Positions 4,162 through 41,769 of a stretch of 64,000 nt of DNA are shown here, piece by piece (position 1 is the stretch's first letter; the number at the start of each line of letters is the position of its first letter). A program made the position numbers and the translations under genes. Source of the DNA: Amphiscolops sp. MND2022 (Eukaryota). The notes under the pieces were generated by a model. That model did not search any database, had not been told where the DNA came from, and saw only the letters and a program-made list of their open reading frames with translations. The stretch is from NCBI GenBank assembly GCA_964187785.1, contig OZ076414.1, positions 38,936,001 through 39,000,000 on the forward strand, read 5' to 3'.

Positions 4162-5146
4162 TGTCGCATATATTAATCTGAATAAAATTCAAAATGATTC
4201 CCCAAAAAAGTGAAAAGATTTATCGAATTCGTTCGCAGACCATGAGTAGTACAGTTTGAAACAACATCAAATGAAATACTTTTGAACAAACGTGTTTTTT
4301 TATTTTGTATATTTATAAAGCTTGAAAGCGCTCCTCAACTTATGAAAACCTGGACTGTCTTCTCCCCCTACTTCTTCCCCGCAAACCCGGCTGCCTTATC
4401 GCACGCCTCACTCCTTGAGGCTGATATTGCGCACCCAGGCGCTGAACGCGCTCTTCCTCAGCCTCCTCGACCTTCAGCGTGGTGGTCATCAAAGACGCTG
4501 GCCCTGGTCCCGTCAATACACAGTGTGCGGTCAATGGGGAAAACAGGACCACATCACCGGGCTCCTGGATGCAGTACACTGTATGTTCCCGGAACTGCAG
4601 GAAATCATCCCGGAGCGTACTAGGCAGGGAACGATGCCTTTCCAACGGAAGCACGATGCGTTTTCTGCGGAGGGTCTTCAACTCGCGTGTTCGAGTGGTG
4701 AAGAACCACAACTTCCTCCCCCTTTCCAGCTGGCTGACAACGCTTCCTCCCGGGTTGGAGTCTATGTGCCAACCACTCCATGCCCAACCACCACTTGCAA
4801 GGAGTGAGACGTGCAAGATGGAGTGCCCGCCAATACCTTGGACAACCTCCACATACTGCTCTCCTAGCGGGCCTGGGTATAGGGCCTCATATCGCCAGGG
4901 AGCTTCTGGAAGACCATCGAAAGAAGCGTTCTTCATCCGTGTGCCCTTGAAGGTTGCCAGAAGTTGCTTCTCACTGCGGAAACAAACAGCAACCCTCCTC
5001 GCTGCTTCGTTGGTGTAACGCAGCACAGGATTGCCACGTATAATAATGGGGATGTTCTGTTTCCTCAAGAAATCCGTTATGCCCCCCTCTCTCACCCGAG
5101 CCAAAGGAAGCCTCCCCGACTCTAACTCCATTATCATGCTTAATGC
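4162..5146 (+). repeat. BEL-A LTR, 3'-truncated copy
   Basis: Starts TGTCGC directly after the PPT and matches 15102-16086. Then breaks into a different BEL integrase fragment. Confidence 0.8.
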
Positions 5147-5182
5147 TTCAGTTCTGAAGAGCTTTCCACCCTTTTTTATCAA
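4340..5182 (-). CDS. JmjC-domain protein (BEL-A LTR cargo) with chimeric N-terminus
   Basis: WHID...GRKLWFF...EPGDVVLFSPLTAHCVLT motifs. The first 12 codons come from the adjacent BEL-C fragment read antisense. Confidence 0.75.
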   Translation of the reverse strand: MIKKGGKLFRTEALSMIMELESGRLPLARVREGGITDFLRKQNIPIIIRGNPVLRYTNEAARRVAVCFRSEKQLLATFKGTRMKNASFDGLPEAPWRYEALYPGPLGEQYVEVVQGIGGHSILHVSLLASGGWAWSGWHIDSNPGGSVVSQLERGRKLWFFTTRTRELKTLRRKRIVLPLERHRSLPSTLRDDFLQFREHTVYCIQEPGDVVLFSPLTAHCVLTGPGPASLMTTTLKVEEAEEERVQRLGAQYQPQGVRRAIRQPGLRGRSRGRRQSRFS

Positions 5183-21251: not shown

Positions 21252-21591
21252 CCTCCTCAATCTTTAATGAAACACCGTGTAATCAGCTGTTTGTTAATGT
21301 TCGCTCATTGTCATTTCTTTTGATGCTGTATTTGTACGTCGTGTAACTTTTTTTTGATTTGCGCCACGCAAAATCAAGTCGGGTGGTATGTCGCATTTAT
21401 TAATCTGAATAAAATTCAAAATAATTCCCCAAACAAGTGAAAAGATTTATCGAATTCGTTCGCAGACCATGAGTTGTGCAGTTTGAAACAAAATCAATCA
21501 AATGAAATACTTTTGAACAAACGTGTTTTTTTATTGTGTATATTTATAAAGCTTGAAAGCGCTCCTCACCTTATGAAAACCTGGACTGTCT

Positions 21592-22392
21592 TCACCCCCT
21601 ACTTCTTCCCCGCGAACCCGGCTGCCTTATCGCACGCCTCACTCCTTGAGGCTGATATTGCGCACCCAGGCGCTGAACGCGCTCTTCCTCGGCCTCCTCG
21701 AACTTCAGCGTGGTGGTCATCAAAGCCGCTGGCCCTGAACCCGTCAATACACAGTGTGCGGTCAATGGGGAAAACAGGACCACATCATCGGGCTCCTGGA
21801 TGCAGTACACTGTTTGTTCCTGGAATTGCAGCAAATCATCCCGGAGCGTACTAGGCAGGGAACGATGCCTTTCCAACGGAAGCACGATGCGTTTTCTGCA
21901 GAGGGTCTTCACCTCGCGTGTTCGAGTGGTGAAGAACCACAACTTCCTCCCCCTTTTCAGCTGGCTGACAACGCTTCCTCCCGGGTTGGAGTCGATGTGC
22001 CAACCACTCCATGCCCAACCACTTGCAAGGAGTGAGACGTGCAAGAAGGAGTGCCCGCCAATACCTTGGACAACCTCCACATACTGCTCTCCTAGCGGGT
22101 CTGGGTATAGGGCCTCATATCGCCAGGGAGCCTCTGGAAGACCATCGAAAGCAGCGTCCTTCATCCGTGTGCCCTTGAAGGTTGCCAGAAAGTGCTTCTC
22201 ACTACGGAAACAAACAGCAACCCTCCTCGCTGCTTCGTTGGTGTAACGCACCACAGGTTTGCCACGTATAAAAATGGGGATGTTCTGTTTCCTCAAGCAA
22301 TCCGTTACGCCCCCCTCTCTCACCCGAGTCAAAGGAAGCCTCCCCGACTCTAACTCCATTATCAGGCTTAATGCAGCCTCAAGCTCATTCAT
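21592..22392 (-). CDS. JmjC-domain protein, third copy (BEL-A 3' LTR)
   Basis: 266 aa open ORF with the HxD...H triad intact. About two dozen amino-acid differences and one codon deletion relative to 15280-16104. Confidence 0.85.
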   Translation of the reverse strand: MNELEAALSLIMELESGRLPLTRVREGGVTDCLRKQNIPIFIRGKPVVRYTNEAARRVAVCFRSEKHFLATFKGTRMKDAAFDGLPEAPWRYEALYPDPLGEQYVEVVQGIGGHSFLHVSLLASGWAWSGWHIDSNPGGSVVSQLKRGRKLWFFTTRTREVKTLCRKRIVLPLERHRSLPSTLRDDLLQFQEQTVYCIQEPDDVVLFSPLTAHCVLTGSGPAALMTTTLKFEEAEEERVQRLGAQYQPQGVRRAIRQPGSRGRSRG

Positions 22393-31114: not shown

Positions 31115-32154
31115 ACAATTGATTCATTTGTTCATAATTCGATCGATGACTGATCATAAATATTTCTGTTACACTGGATTAAAAATGTGCCATGGTCATG
31201 ATGAAATGAAAAATATTTTCGTTGAATTCGAGTAGAAAATTTCTAGCGAAAATCGTGGTTTTTGGTCGAACCCCTCAGTCTTGGTACCAGAAGACTGGCA
31301 ATCATTCACTGAATTGGCAATCAATTGCAATGACTGGCTGCAACTATTAAATTGGAAAACAATAGCAGTGTCACGTAAACTTATTGACACTTCCCAATAA
31401 TTGCACTAATTGTCACTAAGATTTCTCATTTTATGAGTTCTCTACACCAAAACAATCATCATCTTGGCCTGAAAAGTGAAAATCATAATCTGTGTTGTTT
31501 TTTTTTTCAAATTCTGCCGAATCTCCCAGTTTCTTCATCAACCTCACCTATTACTTGACTATTTTAATTACTGAAATAGTCAAGTAACTAAAACAGCTTA
31601 GAGGGATGATTAATATCTAAAGTCAAAAATGGGAATAAGAGAGTTTTACGCCACCTTCGGACAATGATTTTGTGCACATACTCCTCCTTCTTGAATTGGT
31701 GGTAAATCACCCCCACTCTGGTCCATACTTTCTCGATTCTTTGGTCGCTTTTCATCAGGTTAAAGAAATTCACTCTGGGGCTGATAGATCTTCAAATACC
31801 TTCACGTGTTAAACATCCGGTTTTTTGCCAGCTCTTGTTTCTCAATCAGTAGTGTTGACGCTCAAGATGTCAAGGCCAACTTTTCTAAACCAATACTTGA
31901 CTAATTTGCAATCGCACAAAATGAAGACGTGATATTGTGAATCAAATTATACTTTGTTAAACTTGATCACGCTTTTTCAGTTTTGTAAATTTTCGTCACT
32001 GCAAGTTCAATACTGAATGAAACTTTCATGCTGAGAATAAATTCAATCTTTCTTTTGTAAACCAATTTACAAAGTCAACGCTATCCAGCAACATTATTGG
32101 TGCTATACGACCCGGGAGTCGACTCAGAAGTACGATTACTGTTCGAAATCGATC

Positions 32155-33153
32155 ATGATGTCACTTGAAACTAAAACTATAGAGCAACTGCGTAGATTAA
32201 GGTTCGCAATTTTGGGCATTATAACAAAAAATGCCATCAAAATCAATGCTATTGCAGACAAAGCACCGGTCAACGTAACAAACGAAGACCTGGCAACCCT
32301 CAGAGCATTGCTTGAAGTGATGCAAGCGAAATTGACTTTCGCCCTACAACTCAACACAGTCATCCTTGATAAATCAGAAGAAAGTGACGATGCGTTTGAT
32401 ATTGAATTCCAAGCAGGAAATGAATTTGAAGTGAAACTTCAGACCCAAATACAAGAAATTGAAGGTCTCATCGACAGATCAACAGCCCAACCGATTGATT
32501 CTCACTTTCCACAGCCAAGAACCAGTAGAACAATGGGAGTCAAAATGCCAAAGTTTGACATACCGAAGTTTTCGGGGCGATACAAGGACTGGATTCCCTT
32601 CTATGATCAATTCATAGCAGCTGTCGACCAAAACGACACAATACCCGATATACAGAAATTGAACTATTTGAAGGCGTCTTTAAAGGACGAAGCAGCAACA
32701 CTATTGGCTCATTTGCCATTGACAGCATCCAATTACCAGGTTGGCATTAAATTACTTGAAAATCAGTATTCGAACAAGCGATTGATTCTAAAGGCTCATA
32801 TGGAGGAAATTCATCAAGCGCCAAGCCTACGCACTGAGTCTGCAGGTTTGAGGCGTCTACAACTAACGCTGGACGAAAATTTGATGGCTATGGAGGCCAT
32901 GAAGATTGACACTTCACTCAATTGTTTCTATTGGGTACATATTATCTCTGAAAAACTTGACGCAGAGTCAAGAAGGCAATGGGAGTTGGATAGCCCAGGG
33001 GATAATATTCGGAAAATCAACGAATTGCGAGAGTTCATCGCAAAACGGGAACGAGCATTAGAAGCATCAGATAAAATGAAACAATCAACAACCGCAAAGG
33101 GAAAAACATTTCCACACTTCTCCGAAAAATCCGCATCCATTTCAAAGTTATAA
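32155..33153 (+). CDS. BEL-B gag (DUF1759-type)
   Basis: MPKFDIPKFSG.YKDWIPFYDQF, QKLNYLKASL, L...Y.N.RLI motifs. Confidence 0.85.
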   Translation: MMSLETKTIEQLRRLRFAILGIITKNAIKINAIADKAPVNVTNEDLATLRALLEVMQAKLTFALQLNTVILDKSEESDDAFDIEFQAGNEFEVKLQTQIQEIEGLIDRSTAQPIDSHFPQPRTSRTMGVKMPKFDIPKFSGRYKDWIPFYDQFIAAVDQNDTIPDIQKLNYLKASLKDEAATLLAHLPLTASNYQVGIKLLENQYSNKRLILKAHMEEIHQAPSLRTESAGLRRLQLTLDENLMAMEAMKIDTSLNCFYWVHIISEKLDAESRRQWELDSPGDNIRKINELREFIAKRERALEASDKMKQSTTAKGKTFPHFSEKSASISKL

Positions 33154-33224
33154 AACTACAGCATCAATTTGTCCAGCGTGTTCAGATGTAACATCGGATC
33201 TTCAATTGCCAAAAGTTCCAGAAA

Positions 33225-36200
33225 ATGTCACTGACAGAAAAAAGGAATCTAGCATACACTTCCAAGCTTTGTTTCAGTTGCTTGAGAGAGGGTCATATGA
33301 CAAAAGATTGCCCTTCTACATCGACGTGCAAGAAATGCCACAAAAATCACAACACGTGGTTACATGCAGACAAAGTCGACAACAGCAAGTCGAAAACAAT
33401 ACAAGAAACTAATCTACACCATTCGTCAGTGAAATTTAATTCAGTTCTCCTTCCCACTGCAGTAATTCCTGTAGTTGCCTCCGATGGATCCATAATTCAA
33501 TGCAGAGCATTGCTTGACAGTGGAGCTCAATTGAGCATGATAACAGAAGAGTGCACCCAAAATCTTAAACTCAAGAGAACACCAATTTCAATCCAGTTGA
33601 ACGGCATAGTGAGTTCTAAATTTGTGAGTACGTCTTCTGTCGACTTTGAGATTCGCCCTACTCATTTCCAAAAACTGGATGTAAAGGCTCTGGTAAGACC
33701 AAAATTGACTGAATTTCTACCGTCTCAGTCAATCACCAATGCACAATGCTTTCATGCAAAGTCGGTAAAATTGGCTGATCCAGACTTCCTGATGTCAAGA
33801 CGAGTTGATATTTTGGGATCGGATATCTACGAAAGCATAGTATTGGATGGCAAATTGGAAGAAGAGAATGGCCTCCATTTGTGGAAAACCATTTTTGGAT
33901 GGGTTGTGTCAGGAAAACTACCACGAGAAACGACCTCTGCAGTGAATTCAGTAACCATTCTGAAGACGGATATTGATTTGAGAAGATTCTGGGAGATTGA
34001 GGAAGTGCATTCTCCGAAGCAACTAACAGCAGAAGAAATGCAGTGTGAGCAACATTTTCTTGAAACCACACAAGAAGCAGAAGACGCAAGATTCAAGGTG
34101 AAACTGCCATTCAAGCCAGAAGTTAGTAAATTGGGCGAAAGTTTCACACAAGCACGACGTAGATTCATGTCACTAGAACGACGTTTGATAGCAGACCCTG
34201 AACTCCATGAACGTTACAGGATTTTCATCAGAGAATTCATGGATTTGGGACATCTAGAAGAAGTACCACTTAATGAAATAGACAAAGATCCATCTCAACT
34301 GTATTATTTGCCACATCATTGCGTTTTCAAGGAGGAATCAACGACAACCAAATTAAGAGTGGTTTTCGATGGCTCAGCGAAAACGAGCACCGGGCAGTCC
34401 TTGAATGAATCTCTGATGGTGGGTGCAAAACTTCAGTCAGACTTGTACTCGACACTTCTGCGTTTTAGACTACACAAGGTGGCTTTATCCGGTGACATTG
34501 CCAAGATGTATCGTCAAATTGCATTAGCCGATGAAGATAAAGACTTTCATCGCATTTTGTGGCGGGATAGTCCTTCCGAACCACTAAAACATCTGCGAAT
34601 GACGAGGGTCACTTATGGCATCGCGTCATCTTCCTATCATTCGATACGATGTCTCCAGGAAGTGGGAAAGAAGTCTACCGATGAAGCAGTCAAATTGGCC
34701 ATTTTCAATGATTTCTCCGTCGATGATTTCATTGGAGGTGCACCAGATAAAGACACAGCATCATCTTTAGTACATCAATTGATTGCCGCATTGAAGAAGC
34801 ATGGATTTGAACTACGCAAATGGACAAGCAGTGACTCATCGATAACGCTCTCCCTACCTGAAAAATTACGCGAAACAGAAGAATCGTCAAAAATTCTTGA
34901 TAAAGACTACCATATGAAGACACTAGGTATCCGTTGGAACCCCAACCCTGATACTTTCACATTCAATGTGACTCTGGATGCCATGAAACAACATACGAAG
35001 AGAACTTTGTTATCAGACGTATCGAAACTCTTCGATCCTAGTGGATGGCTTGGTCCTGTAATTATTCGCTATAAAGGTCTGCTTCAAAAACTTTGGATTC
35101 TCGGAATTGATTGGTACTCTGAATGGTGACATCAAAGAGTGGCTATCAGCGCGAACCAGCTTAAAACAGCTCGAAGGTTTTCACATTCCACGCTGTGTTT
35201 TGCCTGATGGCGAAATTGAAGACTTTCAACTACATCTTTTCACAGATGCAAGTGAAAAGGCTTACTCTGCGAACGTGTATAGCAGAATCAAATCTAAGGA
35301 TCGTTCAGTTTCAACGAGACTTCTGGTTGCAAAAACACTTGTGGCACCTGTGAAAACAGTCAGTTTGCCTCGATTGGAGTTATGTGGAGCACAACTGGGA
35401 ACCAAATTGATGAGTATCGTCATTGAGTCTCTACAGTCCTCGAAATTGACCATCAATTCTACACATGCATGGACAGATTCGACAATCGTGTTACAATGGT
35501 TGGATCAACTACCACGCACATGGACAACATTCGTTGCAAACAGAGTGTCCGAGATTCAAGAATCAATGCCTAGAGCAGAATGGAACCACATTCCGTCGCA
35601 ACAAAATCCAGCTGATCTATCTTCTCGTGGAATGGAGCTAAATATCATATCTTCATATCTTCAAACCTCTGGTGGCAAGGTCCTCAGTTTCTCGGAGTTA
35701 ATGAAAATCAATGGCCAAAGCAACCGATGCTTTCTGGAACTCCGCCAGAAATTCGATCGAAGGAATCTGACATGAAGCAAACAATTGGAGTTGTGGATAC
35801 GGGAAATCATTCTAGCGGTTTTATTCCCATAGAATGTTATTCCAGTTTCAACAAGCTATTGCGAATAATGGCCACTGTTCATGTAGCTAGTCAACATATG
35901 AGAAAACACAAACGCTCAAATTACATCACAGTAAGTGACATTCACGAGCAAAGAATGGAGTAATCAGATGCCACCAAATAGCGTACTACACGAAAGAGCT
36001 TAGATTATTGCAAAACGATCTGCTGTTGCCAAAAGACAGCAAAATTTTGAACTTGACCCCGATTTATGACGAAGAAACAGGAACATTGCGAGTTGGAGGA
36101 CGTTTATCTCAAGGACAATTCAGAGAAAGCAAAAAGTTTCCATTTTTGATTGCTAAAGATTCACGACTGGCATTTTTGATCCTACAGCCTTTCCATGAAG

Positions 36201-37220
36201 CGATCCTTCATGGCGTGGGGCCTGCTGACTTTGAATGCAAGTCGCGAAGAGTATTGGGTCCCTGGTGGTAGAGAACTCCTCAAGAAAATCATCAAACAGT
36301 GCGTCAAGTGTAGCTGTTTTGAAAACAAAGTTCCATATCAACTCATGGCTGATTTACCCGCTGAAAGAATAACAGTAGCAAAACCCTTCCAAAAAACAGG
36401 TCTAGATTTTGCAGGACCAATTCCCACAAAAACATCACCAAAAACATACATCGCCATATTTGTTTTTGTTGTGAAAGCGGTGCACATAGAGCTAGTGGGA
36501 GACCTCAGGGCTTCCTGAGAAAATATTCAGTGACAATGGAAGGAATTTCATTGGAGCAAGGAACGATATCCTAAAGGTTCAAAAATTACTCTCACTGGAT
36601 TGCAGCAACGAATCTTTGGGAAGTTTTGTAACCCACGAAGGAATTGAATGGGAAACAATGCCACCTCGTGCTCCACATTTTGGCGGATTGTGGGAGGCAT
36701 CCGTAAAAAGCCTAAAACGTCACCTGCGAAAAACAGTCGGTCTACAGATTCTTTCTTCGAAGAACTGAACACAGTAGTCATACAGATTGAATCAATTCTT
36801 AACTCGGGACCTCTAGCAGACATGTCGAATGACCCCAACGATTTACAATCAATCACCCCAGCGCATTTCTTGCTAGGGAGAGCAGCGTCTGACATTCCCA
36901 ACATGACGAACAACATGGACAAAAACATATCGTTGTCTCAAAGATTCAAGCCGCTGGAACGGATTAAACGATCTTTTTGGAAATCATGGCATCGTGATTA
37001 TCTTGTGACACTTCAAGTGCGTAAACGATGGCTCCACTCAGGTCCCAAGTTTTCAGAAGGTGACTTAGTCCTGATTGCAATGGCAATTGGCGAGAATTGA
37101 AAAATTATACTGTGGAAATGACGAAATCAACAGAGTTGCGAAGTTGAAAGTTGGCACTGGATTCCTGATTCGACCTATAGTGAAACTTCGAAAGCTTCCT
37201 GTAGAAAGCATGCATTGATT
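33225..37220 (+). pseudogene. BEL-B pol (knuckles, protease, RT, RNase H, integrase), frameshifted and with deletions in integrase
   Basis: CFSCLREGH, ALLDSGAQ, YYLPHHCVF..STTTKLRVVFDGSAK, FSVDDFIG, HLFTDASEKAY, PRLELCGA, TGLDFAGP, FWKSWHRDYL, RPIVKLRKLP. Confidence 0.92.
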
Positions 37221-37769
37221 TCAGTCAATGAATCGAGAACCCACTCTTATTCAGAATTGAAAACAATCATTGAAAAAAAATTACCTATTATTTCTACCCC
37301 AGACAACCCCAAAAAAGCCCGAAAAAAATCATTGTTTTCAAAAGAAATTCTAAAAAATCAAACCGAACAATTAAAGTACTGACGATTGCCGAGCCTACGA
37401 GCATATTGGAAGCAATTTATCTGCAGCCATCAAAATTGGCAAATTTTTTGAAAATCACCCCTTTCAATTGGCACTGAGAAGATTATTAATTAATATCTGA
37501 CAGTTTTATTACTGAAAAAGACAAGAGAGATAGAGAAGAAGGAAAACCGGTGATAGAGCATTACTCACTTGTTAAAATACAGCGACTGGTCTTTTTTTCT
37601 TTGGGTCTTTACCAGTCACAGACGCTGATTTTATATTTTTAGCATTCAGCTTTTTGTTCGGTGAAAGCAATCTGTATGCCACATATTCTGCAATTAAGTG
37701 AATGTATTACCTCAATCGTATGAACACTTTAGACTGACCTAAACTACTCAACCACTAACCTTTTCTTTG

Positions 37770-38791
37770 CTGCTGCCGTTCCTGAAATTGCATGCGTACA
37801 TCTTTCAAATTATTCAACTTTCTCTGTTTATTTGAAACAGATGGCCGGCCTCTTTTAGATGGACTTTTTGGAGAATTTCCTGTTCGACATTGACACCAAT
37901 TGTCCGATTGCCTGTTTTGGAATTTTTAGCAGTTGCAAGAGCTTCAGAACACTTTTGAGGATTTGATTTCTTCAAACCTACTCTCAGGACTTCATTACAA
38001 ATGCCAAAATTTGGTGACTAAATGGGATTTTAAATGCCTGTCCGTAACATCGTTAGCTTCCCAACCACTATCAAGAAAAGATCCAGTTGAAATAGTCAGG
38101 ACAGAATGAGCGCACAAAGATGGTTGAATTATCATATCAGAGACATCAGTGATGTGATAGAAAATATTTTTCTCACAAGGTAATTTTGGACCCTTCAATA
38201 CCCAGCTGACGAAAGACTCGATCGTGGAAGTCATAGCAAACAATCTACTTGATGCAGCACCGCGTTTGGCTATCATGAACAATTTCCTGCCGATGGGAGT
38301 TAGAGAAACAGATATGTCCCCGCCCTCTTCTACGTGACCATCAGTGAACCAACGTCCAACGCCAATAATTGCTGAGGAATGAGCGCCTTTGACATGACTA
38401 GGTGCAGTGTAGAAGCTCAGTCCTGTCATATCTAATGAACTAGCAAAGGATGTGGATAAATCTTCAACTGGGTTTATTTTTTTTGTTTCTCTTGTGGCAG
38501 TATTATATTTGAATTTTCGGAAGATTGCAGCTAATTGGCGCTTATTGGTGCATTTTTGGACAGCTCGCAAAAATTCTTCATCAAATTTAAATAGACGCTG
38601 ATTGCAGACAAAATTGGTTGGCAAATCCAGACATCATCAAAAATATCTAAACTACTATTATGCGCCTCCTCTTTGATCGAATTCAAATCAAAGCAATTAG
38701 TGCCATCTATTGTTGCAAGCGAATTCCAACCCAAATCTTTCATTCCCTCGCTGGAACTGCACAGTTGAATCAATGAATCCAAATCTGACAT
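37770..38791 (-). pseudogene. Divergent JmjC-domain gene carried antisense between BEL-B pol and the 3' LTR (core ORF 37995-38624)
   Basis: FTDGHVEEGG...GRKLFMI...DMIIQPSLCAHSVLT gives T94, H97, E99, K114, H173. A frameshifted N-terminal ORF lies at 38531-38791 and a frameshifted basic tail with KRGRP at 37842-37856. Confidence 0.75.
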
Positions 38792-41769
38792 TGCTGATCT
38801 GGAAGAGAATTATATCATTAATGTACCGAACAGATCATCTCATTTGAAGAATGTGCATTCTTCAAGGGGCCCGGTATGTTGACGCTCAAGATGTCAAGAC
38901 CAACTTTTCTAAACCAATACTTGACTAATTTGCAATCGCACAAAATGAAGACGTGATATTGTGAATGAAAATATAATTTGTTAAACTTGATCACGCTTTT
39001 TCAGTTGTTTGTAAATTTTCGTCACTGCAAGTTCAATACTGAATGAAACTTTCATGCTGAGATTAAATTCAATCTTTCTTTTGTAAACCAATTTACAAAG
39101 TCAACGCTATCCAGCAACAAGTAGGTTGATTTTCTTGATTCGGCTACCAAATTAAACAATGATTGGTTTCTATTTACCTACACGAGTGTCAGCCTATGCT
39201 CAATGGAACTGTCGTTCGCCGTTACACTAGCACCAATAATGTTGGCAATAGCAACCACTTTTCTCCTTATAAATTGAAGAAACCCTCTCGCTGGATGATA
39301 TGAAACAGTTGTTAACGGTCTTTTTTGAGATGTAAAACCATTCACTATAATACGTACTAGGTATGCGTGCATCGCAAGGTTCGTGTACTTAGAAGGCGGG
39401 AACTGCATTAGTCAGGCTTTTGGTACCGAATAACTGTAATTAGTGCCAGAGCCTGGTACCAAAGACTCCGAAGATGCATTTGTTGTTTGATTAGATTGTA
39501 CTGTAATACGAATTTCTTCATTTATTCAATTCATATTCTCGTGTATAAACTCTTTAAAATGAGTTAATGCTAATGCTAGAATACTGTATAAGCTAGATGT
39601 GGCTGTTTTTGGTGCTGAAAAGATTTCACTCATTAGGACTTCGGAAAATATTTAATTTCTCCAAGTATTATCCGGGTCATTGTTTTTATTGTCTCGATAT
39701 AAACATTTTCCGTAAGATATTCTTCCTGTCGTTCACAATTGTATCACTTCGGTCAAAGGGGACGACTTTCTGTCAATTTAAAGGAACCAATCACGCTAAT
39801 ATTTTCGTTTTCACATTCGCATTTACTTTGAAAAAGTTCCGTGTTCTCTCCCAAAACGTGCAGCAGTAGAAAGCATTAGTGCGTTTCGTAATTTCCCGAA
39901 GTCCTTTACTCCACGGGCACCCACCTATGTTTTAGATTACCATTCCTAATTAGCTGCTACACTTACATTTGAATTTTAATCATGTAACACCTTCACACAT
40001 GGTAATTTCTCTGTTGCATGATGTAAAACATTGATGAAAGTACTTTCACCTTCCAAAACCATTGTCTATTTTTATCTCATTAAATCTCTCATATTGATAA
40101 GTCGATGAAAACTCAAGTCATTTGGCTGTTTTTTTTCACTTGCTCATTCCTACTATTTTTTTTGGGATCTTAGATAAACTTTTATTCACAAACTGTTTGA
40201 ATCTTTTTCGAGTAATGAATGGATCCTCGTCAACGACCACTTTCTCAGTGTTATATGGAAAGCTCTATAAAACTTCTGTCTTGTTTTTCTGACTCGTTCT
40301 GAAGATGGATGTTCTTTTTGAAGAAATGAATGAAGTAGCGTTCGTAATCTTCGCCCAAAAATGATACAGGAGTTATTCAGTGTTTGAAGTTCAATTCTAC
40401 CAATGTATTGTAATGTAGAAGCCCAAATAATTCAATGATTTAAAATAGTTTTTCTTGCTGTGAGTTTATACATTTTAATACAGTTAGCTATTCACTTGAA
40501 GCAATGATAAAGTGTGTGGATATTCGCCATAGAATTATTTTATTCCCGTTTAATTATTTTTAATTTTACAGAAATCTTCAAGGGCTCATGCCCGCAGTGG
40601 GAAACCCTCAATTACAAACAATTTCTGATAAAATCGTACTCGAAAGAACAGCTTCGATTTTTTATCGCTTTGTTAATGTACTTTCCAAGAGTTGGAAAAA
40701 AATTTTCCTGTGGAATCGCACCTGTGCAAAAATTTTGACTACCTGTGCAATCGTAACTTTTTTCTCCCGAACTTTCAAGAAAATCAAGTTTTTCGCCACT
40801 GTGCGGCTTTTTCGACAAAAAAATTCATTTGGTCATATGGTACCCCCTTTACTTTAAAAAAAAGTTTTTGGCTTGGAATAAATGTTTTCCGAACTTAGAA
40901 GGCCTCCTTTTCGGGACTGAGACTTTTCCCGATTTTTTTCGACAATTTGTTTTTTTTTCGGCACCGCGACTTTGAAATTTTTTTCATTTGCTCATAGGGT
41001 CACCTCTTCATTTTCATTTTTTTTCGACGTGTAAAAAGTTCCTTTCTCGGCACTGTGAGACTTTTTTCCAAAGAAAAAATTTAACTTCCAGAAACATTTG
41101 ATGTTTCCAGTTGGGAAAAGCGGTTTTCGAGTCTTTTGGCTATCTTCCTTCGTGTTTTTTTCCGGCACTGTGATTTTGATGATTTTTTGCATATTTAACC
41201 CTAACGAACCTAGTGGTGCTTTAAAGCAGCCGATCTTTTTTCCAAATTCTGATTCCTTTTGCCAGTAGCCCATTTTCTCTAGTACAGTTTTCAACAATTA
41301 ATTGGTACCTAGGTTGATTTGAATGGCACAAGCATTAGAAAAAATGAATATGTCTCCAAAGCTGAGAAAAATGTTTTTTTTGCACAAAAATGGTTATTTT
41401 TTCCCAAAATTCAGTTTTTGACGAAATCCAGTTTTCTCAAAAGTCTTTGATCAATAGAAAAAAAAGCAACCACATACCCTTCCACAGCAAGTCCTGGTGC
41501 AGCGAACCCCAATTATATTCTGCTACTACAAGCCCCCGAAGTGTGGAACTGCCGCGAAGCGGTGGTACCGGAAAAAGGCTAAAATTCTGAAGGGGCGAAC
41601 AGCGAGAGAGCTCACCTGACCAAAATGAAAGCCCAATACCAGACCTTTCAAACGCGCTAGAGTTTGTTTCTCTGGTACGCGTAGTTGTATTGATGAATTT
41701 TTTGAAATTTTTTAAAAACGCCCAGGTCAATCGGGGTTAATAAACTTGGATCATTTTTAGGAGTCGGAA

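What the first reader, a model, noticed from the sequence alone, without database searches (positions are those of the whole stretch)
37770..38876. A second, very divergent JmjC gene in another BEL/Pao family, suggesting JmjC carriage is a lineage trait
Seen: the TSD-bounded BEL-B element (31853-39119) has ~1.65 kb of extra sequence between pol and the 3' LTR. Antisense it encodes FTDGHVEEGG...GRKLFMI...QPSLCAHSVLT (T94, H97, E99, K114, H173). A frameshifted N-terminus starts ~85 bp from the 3' LTR, and a frameshifted basic tail contains an AT-hook-like KRGRP (37842-37856). Known: the T-x-x-H-x-D/E...K(+17)...H layout matches KDM2/KDM7-type JmjC enzymes (human KDM2A T209, H212, D214, K229, H284). 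It shares only motif-level similarity with the BEL-A cargo (GRKL, P..AH.VLT). Inference: two divergent BEL families with the cargo in the same orientation at the 3' end point to an ancient, retained accessory gene, or repeated capture, driven by an antisense LTR promoter.
Basis: partly seen in the sequence, partly recalled or inferred. Interest (0 to 1): 0.88.

Follow-up and report, generated by a model that had tools for sequence, protein, structure and literature searches.

The report
Retrotransposon-borne antisense JmjC oxygenase gene
A decayed BEL/Pao jumping gene in this animal genome carries, backwards next to its right-hand repeat, a two-exon gene for a small enzyme with the fold and catalytic residues of histone demethylases. 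The same gene family also rides in a different superfamily of retroelements, so it looks like a portable accessory gene that may counter silencing.

Summary
The element at 31853-39119 is a TSD-flanked BEL/Pao retrotransposon. About 1.65 kb lies between pol and the 3' LTR, encoding on the minus strand a protein with T94/H97/E99/K114/H173 and a KRGRP AT-hook.

Pfam and PDB sequence searches miss it. A confident AlphaFold model of an intact sister copy matches KDM2A, KDM7 and PHF8 best (Z about 15), and the catalytic residues align in register with PHF8.

The window copy is a pseudogene with four frame breaks. The gene has two exons and runs to 37572, beyond the finding.

- Every close BEL-B copy found carries the cargo, and it is homologous to the BEL-A cargo (hhalign E 2.5e-9).
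- It is not BEL-specific. The same family, with the same phase-1 intron, sits between pol and an env-like ORF of Gypsy-type elements here and in at least two other samples.
- The nearest foreign relatives of the BEL-B cargo are Gypsy-borne, so cargo and pol histories are decoupled.

Deep dN/dS is 0.1-0.3. Expression, the antisense LTR promoter and enzyme activity are untested. This scan has noted the same phenomenon many times elsewhere in this genome. I found no published description.

The parts
31848..31852 (.). Left copy of the 5-bp target-site duplication (AGTAG)
   Evidence: the same pentamer follows the 3' LTR at 39120-39124
31853..32093 (+). 5' LTR of the BEL-B element (241 bp, TG..CA)
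   Evidence: 236 of 241 aligned bases identical to the 3' LTR
32155..33153 (+). gag (DUF1759)
   Evidence: E 7e-32
33225..37222 (+). pol (protease, RT, Peptidase_A17, integrase, DUF5641), split over several frames in this copy
   Evidence: the stop position follows from the L002 pol ORF
37572..37687 (-). Cargo exon 2: 38 codons plus stop, starting EYVAYRLL and ending in a basic KDPKKKRPV stretch
   Evidence: the peptide is conserved in L005, L006, L010. Its first 8-13 residues are also conserved in L007, L014 and Gypsy-borne L050
37688..37759 (-). Predicted 72-nt phase-1 intron with GT..AG ends
   Evidence: donor and acceptor sit at the same codon position in BEL-B, L007/L014 and L050 although the intron sequence differs. 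No RNA evidence
37760..38791 (-). Cargo exon 1 (348 codons in intact sister copies), here interrupted by four frame-shifting deletions
37842..37856 (-). AT-hook-like KRGRP, out of frame with the core ORF in this copy
   Evidence: the GRP core is kept in the BEL-B clade, L016, L030, P0009, P0010 and P0013, but only in 5 of 44 long database members
37995..38624 (-). Longest surviving ORF (209 aa), which is the JmjC double-stranded beta-helix core
38328..38345 (-). T94-x-x-H97-x-E99: a 2OG-contacting Thr and two Fe(II) ligands. They align with PHF8 T244, H247 and D249
38283..38285 (-). K114, the 2OG-binding lysine, 17 residues after the first His. It aligns with PHF8 K264
38106..38108 (-). H173, the third Fe(II) ligand. 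It aligns with PHF8 H319
38877..39119 (+). 3' LTR (243 bp). Its antisense strand lies directly upstream of the cargo ATG and is a candidate, untested promoter
39120..39124 (.). Right copy of the target-site duplication (AGTAG)

Best explanation
The region is the accessory gene of a decayed BEL/Pao LTR retrotransposon.

In intact sister copies it is a two-exon gene on the strand opposite gag-pol. It starts 85 nt inside the 3' LTR. It encodes a protein of about 386 aa that is essentially a bare KDM2/KDM7-type JmjC catalytic core. The core keeps a complete Fe(II) triad (H-x-E...H) and the 2-oxoglutarate-binding Thr and Lys. A basic tail with an AT-hook follows.

Because the gene is antisense, its intron is not removed from the element's genomic RNA and so survives retrotransposition.

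Inferred mechanism:
- The gene is transcribed from its own antisense promoter in or next to the LTR, and the transcript is spliced.
- The protein enters the nucleus and binds AT-rich DNA or chromatin through its tail.
- It removes repressive histone lysine methyl marks, which favours expression of the element. This is an anti-silencing function.

The gene belongs to a family that moves between retroelement superfamilies (BEL/Pao and env-bearing Gypsy-type). It is not inherited only within BEL.

The window copy itself is a dead pseudogene.

Shown: gene structure, fold, catalytic residues, family distribution and purifying selection. Inferred: transcription, splicing, nuclear action, substrate and benefit to the element.
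For: Fold:
- AlphaFold model of L002: pLDDT 86, pTM 0.80.
- Foldseek against PDB: PHF2, ceKDM7A, PHF8 and KDM2A at the top, E from 2.5e-8. 435 hits at E<=0.001, and all 50 listed are JmjC/cupin oxygenases.
- VIA-align: Z 15.0 to KDM2A, 14.9 to ceKDM7A and PHF8, over about 250 residues.
- AFDB and ESM Atlas agree. The top Atlas cluster is JmjC+JHD+PHD, TM 0.59.
- The language-model feature search also returns JmjC clusters.

Residues:
- T150, H153, E155 and K170 are invariant among the 16 sequences of A1, and H229 is nearly so. In the 32-sequence A2, H229 is invariant and T150, E155 and K170 are at least 90% conserved.
- They align in register with PHF8 T244, H247, D249, K264 and H319. The roles of those PHF8 residues are given in PMC9516565.
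- The H-x-D/E...K...H motif is kept in 39 of 44 long family members.

Selection (dN/dS):
- 0.22 for L007 against P0004, 0.11 for P0004 against P0005, 0.20 for L024 against L028.
- dS is saturated at dN about 0.3 between BEL-B and its 60%-identical relatives.

Gene structure: intron position, phase and splice signals are conserved, and so is exon 2, across BEL-borne and Gypsy-borne copies.

Distribution:
- At least 150 genomic matches.
- 331 cluster representatives at E<=0.001 among 1.84 billion proteins.
- BEL or Gypsy-env contexts.
Against: - No sequence profile recognises the protein. Pfam gives nothing at E<=10, and PHF8 is the top PDB sequence hit only at E 0.94.
- The lead of KDM2/7 over other JmjC classes is only 1-2 Z units, so a hydroxylase role is not excluded.
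- No RNA run holds the sequence. Transcription, splicing and the promoter are therefore unproven.
- The AT-hook is present only in some clades.
- The PHF8 Y257 position, a further 2OG contact, is not conserved.
- The copy in the window cannot make the protein.
Confidence: 0.55

Rival explanations
1. The protein is an active JmjC oxygenase, but it acts as a protein or RNA hydroxylase (JMJD4, JMJD6, FIH or TYW5-like). It would modify a host or element protein rather than demethylate histones.
For: - JMJD5, FIH, JMJD6 and TYW5 score Z 13.1-13.8 against 15.0 for KDM2A.
- JMJD4 and JMJD6/psr-1 are among the top AFDB and Atlas hits.
- No histone-reader domain is present.
Against: - The best and longest structural matches, and the only sequence-level register, are to KDM2/KDM7/PHF8.
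- The T(-3) and K(+17) spacing equals PHF8.
- An AT-hook tail suggests chromatin targeting.
Confidence: 0.2
2. The JmjC gene is an ancient accessory gene inherited vertically within BEL/Pao elements, and the BEL-A and BEL-B cargos are its diverged descendants.
For: - The BEL-A and BEL-B/Gypsy cargo profiles are homologous (probability 96%, E 2.5e-9).
- Many BEL lineages with pol C-termini 71-76% identical to BEL-B have an antisense cargo about 1 kb downstream of pol.
- An AU test does not reject monophyly of the BEL-borne members of the BEL-B clade (p 0.147).
Against: - The 100/100-supported clade holding the BEL-B cargo also holds Gypsy-env-borne copies from another organism. In the ML tree these are sister to BEL-borne L007/L014.
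- All other clades of known context are Gypsy-env-borne.
- BEL lineages at equal pol distance (about 74%) carry cargos either 66% or 31-39% identical to BEL-B's.
- BEL-A and BEL-B pol are 41-49% identical, but the cargos are only 22-25% identical, one inside the LTR and the other outside it.
Confidence: 0.2
3. The ORF is incidental. What matters is an antisense RNA that regulates the element, or the segment is a one-off captured host fragment.
For: The window copy is frameshifted. Young copy pairs give dN/dS of 0.65-1.4, as expected for neutral decay after insertion.
Against: - Deep dN/dS is 0.1-0.3.
- Catalytic residues are invariant or nearly so.
- Splice sites are conserved.
- The gene is present in every close BEL-B copy and in hundreds of other loci.
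- No close host donor exists. The Pfam JmjC hits in the genome do not include this family.
Confidence: 0.03

Closest known systems
KDM2A/JHDM1 and KDM7/PHF8/PHF2 JmjC histone lysine demethylases
   Same: - Same double-stranded beta-helix core with its N-terminal strands and following helices. Z is about 15 over about 250 residues.
- Same H-x-D/E...H metal triad.
- Thr at -3 and Lys at +17 from the first His, as in PHF8 T244 and K264.
   Different: - No PHD, CXXC, F-box or LRR modules.
- Only about 386 aa, with an AT-hook and basic tail instead.
- 11-14% sequence identity.
- Not recognised by Pfam JmjC or JHD.
- Encoded inside retrotransposons, on the antisense strand.
AlkB-type 2OG dioxygenase ORF in giant Ty3/Gypsy elements of Phalaenopsis orchids (PMC9289625)
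   Same: An Fe(II)/2OG dioxygenase fixed as an extra ORF in an LTR retrotransposon lineage. It is proposed to counter host surveillance by removing methyl marks.
   Different: - AlkB rather than JmjC fold.
- The substrate is m6A in RNA, and activity was shown in vitro.
- Plant host and a single Gypsy lineage. I did not check that ORF's strand or intron content.
- Here the gene is antisense, contains an intron, occurs in animals, and spans two superfamilies.
TET/JBP dioxygenase genes in fungal DNA transposons (PMC12730594)
   Same: Diverse transposon lineages carry a 2OG dioxygenase that can erase an epigenetic silencing mark.
   Different: - DNA transposons rather than retrotransposons.
- TET/JBP fold acting on 5mC in DNA.
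- Fungi rather than animals.
ORF3 types shared between diverse retroelements in bdelloid rotifers (PMC5408684)
   Same: Accessory ORFs downstream of pol are shared among unrelated retroelement types and acquired independently more than once.
   Different: The rotifer ORF3s are GDSL esterase, DEDDy exonuclease, coiled-coil, TM or env types. The paper contains no JmjC or dioxygenase.
Host JmjC proteins that oppose silencing or support retrotransposition: S. pombe Epe1 (10.1101/2022.07.04.498379) and Dictyostelium CbfA (PMC4559204)
   Same: JmjC-domain proteins act as anti-silencing factors or are needed for retrotransposon amplification. CbfA also appears among the structural hits.
   Different: They are host-encoded, large, multidomain proteins, not carried by the element.

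Membership tests
JmjC / cupin Fe(II)-2OG oxygenase superfamily | Double-stranded beta-helix (jelly-roll) catalytic fold | tested here: met
   Model pLDDT 86. Foldseek gives 435 PDB hits at E<=0.001, and all 50 listed are JmjC/cupin oxygenases. VIA Z is 13-15. Atlas TM is 0.5-0.59.
JmjC / cupin Fe(II)-2OG oxygenase superfamily | H-x-D/E...H facial triad for Fe(II) | tested here: met
   H153 and E155 are invariant and H229 nearly so in the 16 sequences of A1. In the 32 sequences of A2, H229 is invariant and E155 is at least 90% conserved. They align with PHF8 H247, D249 and H319. The motif is present in 39 of 44 long members.
JmjC / cupin Fe(II)-2OG oxygenase superfamily | Basic or polar residues that bind the 2OG C5 carboxylate | tested here: met
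   T150 and K170 are invariant in A1 and at least 90% conserved in A2. They align with PHF8 T244 and K264. The PHF8 Y257 position is not conserved.
JmjC / cupin Fe(II)-2OG oxygenase superfamily | Match to the curated sequence profile (Pfam PF02373, Cupin_8 or JmjC_2) above its cut-off | tested here: not met
   No Pfam family at E<=10 for three intact members or at E<=1 for the window ORF. The genome-wide PF02373 scan does not hit this family.
JmjC / cupin Fe(II)-2OG oxygenase superfamily | Fe(II)- and 2OG-dependent catalysis | not testable with these tools
   Needs recombinant protein and an enzyme assay.
KDM2/KDM7 (JHDM1/PHF8) subfamily | Closest structural neighbours are KDM2/KDM7 members, clearly above other JmjC classes | tested here: inconclusive
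   KDM2A, ceKDM7A, PHF8 and PHF2 are on top at Z 14-15. JMJD5, UTY, FIH and JMJD6 follow at 13.1-13.8, and the tool treats differences under 1 as ties.
KDM2/KDM7 (JHDM1/PHF8) subfamily | Thr three residues before, and Lys 17 residues after, the first metal-binding His | tested here: met
   T150, H153 and K170 against PHF8 T244, H247 and K264.
KDM2/KDM7 (JHDM1/PHF8) subfamily | Helical JHD module after the JmjC barrel | tested here: inconclusive
   Helices at 254-306 are included in alignments to KDM2A 37-357 and PHF8. The top Atlas cluster carries PF17811 JHD. Pfam JHD does not hit.
KDM2/KDM7 (JHDM1/PHF8) subfamily | Chromatin-reader or targeting modules (PHD, CXXC, F-box/LRR) | tested here: not met
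   No such Pfam domains. The protein is only the catalytic core plus a basic tail.
KDM2/KDM7 (JHDM1/PHF8) subfamily | Histone lysine demethylase activity | not testable with these tools
   Requires biochemical assay.
BEL/Pao LTR retrotransposon (the carrier) | LTRs with a TSD, gag with DUF1759, and pol with Peptidase_A17, RT and integrase with DUF5641 | tested here: met
AT-hook DNA-binding motif | G-R-P core flanked by basic residues | tested here: met
   KRGRP at 37842-37856. It is conserved in the BEL-B clade and a few others, but only in 5 of 44 long database members. DNA binding was not tested.

The most novel reading that the evidence does not exclude
A compact histone-demethylase-like gene with its own intron and antisense promoter is a portable anti-silencing module. 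Env-bearing Gypsy-type retroelements and BEL/Pao elements exchange it, within and between animal species. Retroelements would then actively erase the heterochromatin marks laid on them.
Probability: 0.3. Interest if true: 0.85.

Novelty: new variant of a known kind. Interest (0 to 1): 0.7.

Why it matters
Transposon silencing in animals ends in repressive histone methylation, and few element-encoded counter-measures are known. The full-text searches run here found no JmjC enzyme encoded by an LTR retrotransposon.

This gene has several features that make it a concrete, testable candidate for a retroelement-encoded eraser of silencing marks:
- It is conserved and under purifying selection.
- It contains an intron and lies antisense.
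- It has an intact demethylase-type active site.
- It is shared by two retroelement superfamilies and several host samples.

It also shows that accessory genes can be exchanged between BEL/Pao and Gypsy-type elements.

The protein defines a JmjC family that current sequence profiles miss. Similar cargo may therefore go unannotated in other genomes.

Tried and rejected
- **Pfam.** Scans of the window ORFs and three intact members found no JmjC hit.
- **PDB by sequence.** phmmer found nothing. The 16-sequence profile found only noise. The 32-sequence profile put PHF8 on top, but at E 0.94.
- **More genomic DNA.** Contexts therefore rest on 1.5-kb flanks, on coordinate matching between the cargo and pol searches, and on contigs from other assemblies.
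- **RNA evidence.** Neither run search found an RNA run. The reads laid were DNA contigs only. They confirmed that three of the frame breaks are real in a low-depth run, and that the family majority is unbroken.
- **BEL monophyly.** The AU test did not reject monophyly of the BEL-borne cargos (p 0.147). The paraphyly seen in the ML tree is therefore suggestive only.
- **L013 as a possible source.** I tested whether the BEL-adjacent 31-39% cargos belong to the L013 Gypsy clade. They are equally distant from it at 32-34%, so they remain unplaced.
- **P0009.** It has no contig on record.
- **One-off host-fragment hypothesis.** Rejected.
- **Prokaryotic promoter scan.** Not used, because it does not apply to an animal genome.
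- **Host organism.** Not identified, because run names are coded.
Full report
**1. The element**

Direct repeats of 241 and 243 bp at 31853-32093 and 38877-39119 bound the element.
- They begin TG and end CA.
- They share 236 of 241 aligned bases plus one 2-bp indel.
- They are flanked by the 5-bp duplication AGTAG.

Between them lie a gag ORF matching DUF1759 and pol ORFs matching aspartic protease, RVT_1, Peptidase_A17 and DUF5641. This is a BEL/Pao retrotransposon.
- pol is split over several frames.
- By comparison with the intact pol end of sister copy L002, pol stops near 37220. That leaves about 1,656 bp before the 3' LTR.

**2. The antisense gene in the window**

The 209-aa ORF at 37995-38624 (-) contains T94, H97, E99, K114 and H173 exactly as reported.
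- An 86-aa ORF in another frame starts at ATG 38791, 85 nt from the LTR.
- A third frame encodes KRGRP at 37842-37856.

Aligned with L002, the region is 97.9% identical. It differs by four frame-shifting deletions, near 38611, 38004-38009, 37911-37914 and 37863-37866.

Contigs of public DNA runs bear on these breaks.
- High-depth contigs, which represent the collapsed family, carry the unbroken form at all four places.
- Low-depth contigs of run X2 match the window without gaps across three of the breaks.
- The breaks therefore belong to this copy and are not assembly slips.

The window copy is a pseudogene.

**3. Gene model**

In L002 and L003 the first exon is an uninterrupted 348-codon ORF. 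It ends at a G|GT donor.

In the window a 72-nt GT..AG interval (37759-37688) follows. Then comes a second exon (37687-37572) of 38 codons, starting EYVAYRLL and ending in a basic KDPKKKRPV stretch.

Conservation supports this model.
- The exon-2 peptide is conserved in L005, L006 and L010 (92-95% identical; L006's exon 1 is only 73% identical to the window's). Its first 8-13 residues are also conserved in L007, L014 and the Gypsy-borne copy L050.
- In those more distant copies the intron sequence has diverged. The donor, the polypyrimidine-AG acceptor, the position after the QQ(R/K)(K/R) codons and phase 1 are all kept.

An intron can persist in a retroelement only if it lies antisense to the genomic RNA. 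Its conserved signals argue that a spliced antisense mRNA is under selection. No RNA data were available to confirm this.

**4. What the protein is**

Sequence methods fail.
- Pfam gives nothing.
- PDB sequence searches give nothing significant.

Structure is clear. An AlphaFold model built from a 16-sequence alignment has pLDDT 86 and pTM 0.80.

| Search | Result |
|---|---|
| Foldseek, PDB | PHF2, ceKDM7A, PHF8, KDM2A, then FIH, JMJD6, NO66, KDM5/6; 435 hits at E<=0.001 |
| VIA-align | Z 15.0 to KDM2A; 14.9 to ceKDM7A and PHF8; about 250 aligned residues across model residues 1-323 |
| VIA-align, other JmjC classes | Z 13.1-13.8 |
| AFDB libraries | JmjC proteins |
| ESM Atlas, by structure | KDM7-type (JmjC+JHD+PHD) and KDM2-type (CXXC+JmjC+F-box) clusters first |
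| ESM Atlas, by language-model features | JmjC clusters |

With a broader 32-sequence profile, PHF8 becomes the top PDB sequence hit. It is not significant (E 0.94), but it is in the correct register. T150, H153, E155, K170 and H229 align with PHF8 T244, H247, D249, K264 and H319.
- H247, D249 and H319 are the Fe ligands in PHF8.
- T244 and K264 contact the co-substrate carboxylate (PMC9516565).

These residues are invariant or nearly so across the family, and 39 of 44 long database members keep the motif.

The protein is thus a bare KDM2/KDM7-like catalytic core with a basic tail. The AT-hook GRP core is kept in the BEL-B clade and a few other clades, but not family-wide.

**5. Selection**

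Results:

| Comparison | dN/dS |
|---|---|
| L007 vs P0004 | 0.22 |
| P0004 vs P0005 | 0.11 |
| L024 vs L028 | 0.20 |
| L020 vs L021 | 0.34 |
| L002 vs window | 0.65 |
| L002 vs L006 | 0.73 |

- dS is saturated while dN is about 0.3 between BEL-B and its 60%-identical relatives.
- The young-pair values (0.65, 0.73) are what neutral decay after insertion would give.

**6. Distribution and carriers**

The genome holds at least 150 matches. The 1.84-billion-protein library holds 331 cluster representatives at E<=0.001, none of them named.

BEL carriers:
- The five other copies with pol C-termini at least 95% identical to BEL-B's are exactly the loci that carry the cargo.
- L007 and L014, whose cargos are 63-66% identical, also adjoin BEL pol.
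- Eight further BEL loci with pol C-termini 71-74% identical have antisense cargos about 1 kb downstream. Those cargos are only 31-39% identical to BEL-B's (coordinates).

Gypsy-type carriers:
- Most other clades lie in Gypsy-type elements (RT_RNaseH_2, Integrase_H2C2, rve).
- There the gene sits antisense between pol and a 580-870-aa ORF3. That ORF3 has no Pfam match, and earlier notes of this scan call it env.

Other samples:
- In sample ERZ26859043, P0004 and P0007 sit in such Gypsy-env elements.
- P0004 is 61% identical to the BEL-B cargo and 71-73% identical to L007 and L014.
- This genome has no closer copy of P0004, so that sample comes from a different organism.
- P0019 shows the same architecture in a third sample.

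**7. Phylogeny**

A careful ML tree gives a 100/100 clade holding the BEL-B cargos, BEL-borne L007 and L014, P0005, and Gypsy-borne P0004 and P0007.
- This clade is one branch of a radiation whose other members of known context are all Gypsy-env-borne.
- In the ML tree the Gypsy-borne copies of the second organism are sister to L007 and L014.
- An AU test does not reject monophyly of the BEL-borne members (p 0.147).
- Either way, the carrier superfamily changed at least once within a tight clade that shares the same intron.

BEL-A and BEL-B differ further.
- pol is 41-49% identical.
- The cargos are only 22-25% identical, although clearly homologous (hhalign E 9e-4 with a single sequence, 2.5e-9 profile against profile).
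- The BEL-A cargo lies inside the LTR.
- Within the BEL-B/L007 lineage the cargo (63%) diverges no faster than the pol C-terminus (56%).

The BEL-A/BEL-B cargo gap is therefore too deep for simple co-divergence. Exchange or repeated acquisition from a shared pool fits better than a single ancient BEL trait. Neither the root nor the direction has been proven.

**8. Mechanism**

Shown:
- an intact active-site signature;
- the fold;
- purifying selection;
- a conserved antisense two-exon structure;
- the position next to the LTR.

Inferred:
- transcription from an antisense promoter in or near the 3' LTR. In Gypsy-type carriers the promoter must be internal, because there the gene is head-to-head with ORF3;
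- nuclear and chromatin targeting through the basic or AT-hook tail;
- demethylation of repressive histone lysine marks to the element's benefit.

A hydroxylase role is the main functional rival.

**9. Literature**

Full-text searches found no LTR retrotransposon encoding a JmjC enzyme. The nearest precedents are:
- an AlkB-type m6A demethylase in orchid Gypsy elements (PMC9289625);
- TET/JBP genes in fungal DNA transposons (PMC12730594);
- ORF3 sharing among rotifer retroelements (PMC5408684);
- the host JmjC proteins Epe1 and CbfA.

This scan has already flagged the same phenomenon many times in this genome. I reached the Gypsy context independently, and I took the two-exon idea as a lead from those notes before testing it here.

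**10. Verdict**

- The JmjC assignment is confirmed by structure, not by profile.
- The copy in the window is dead.
- The "BEL lineage trait" inference needs to be replaced by [quoted passage not shown].
- Function and expression remain to be tested.

Noticed in passing
L048:6986-18376 and L047, L050, L052, L054, L055 (contigs of ERZ25074608, ERZ26859043, ERZ25071359): Gypsy-type elements ordered gag, RT, RNaseH-integrase, antisense JmjC gene, then a sense ORF3 of 580-870 aa with no Pfam match. Earlier notes call ORF3 env-like. The JmjC gene and ORF3 are head-to-head, about 0.4-1.4 kb apart.
   Followed up: partly
L049:1-21077 (ERZ25074608 contig): A distant member of the family (P0121, 358 aa) lies in a repeat unit of about 9.6 kb, present at least twice in tandem. 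The unit also holds PIF1-helicase fragments, so it may be a Helitron-like or other non-LTR carrier.
   Followed up: no
G000, e.g. C7:8654885-8655193 and C1:26460262-26460573: Dozens of near-identical, Pfam-positive JmjC ORFs form two further multi-copy families. One has 207-aa open frames at 39.8 bits and the other 206-aa frames at 29.4 bits. They are distinct from this cargo and probably also repeat-borne.
   Followed up: no
window:15280-16104 (-), also 4343-5149 and 21574-22392: The BEL-A cargo is a 274-aa ORF with a borderline Pfam JmjC hit (23 bits against a cut-off of 24). It has H-x-D, a Lys at +18 and a second His. It occurs in pairs about 7 kb apart across the genome, consistent with a position inside LTRs.
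   Followed up: partly
window:37523-37524: Relative to the high-depth family contigs and to L002, this copy lacks 63 bp just downstream of the cargo stop codon.
   Followed up: no
G000 coordinates C13:32593037/32594641, C2:99293947/99292385, C7:65142721/65144541 and five more pairs: BEL elements whose pol C-termini are 71-74% identical to BEL-B carry antisense cargos only 31-39% identical to the BEL-B cargo. These cargos are equally far from the L013 Gypsy clade. They form an unplaced BEL-borne cargo group.
   Followed up: partly
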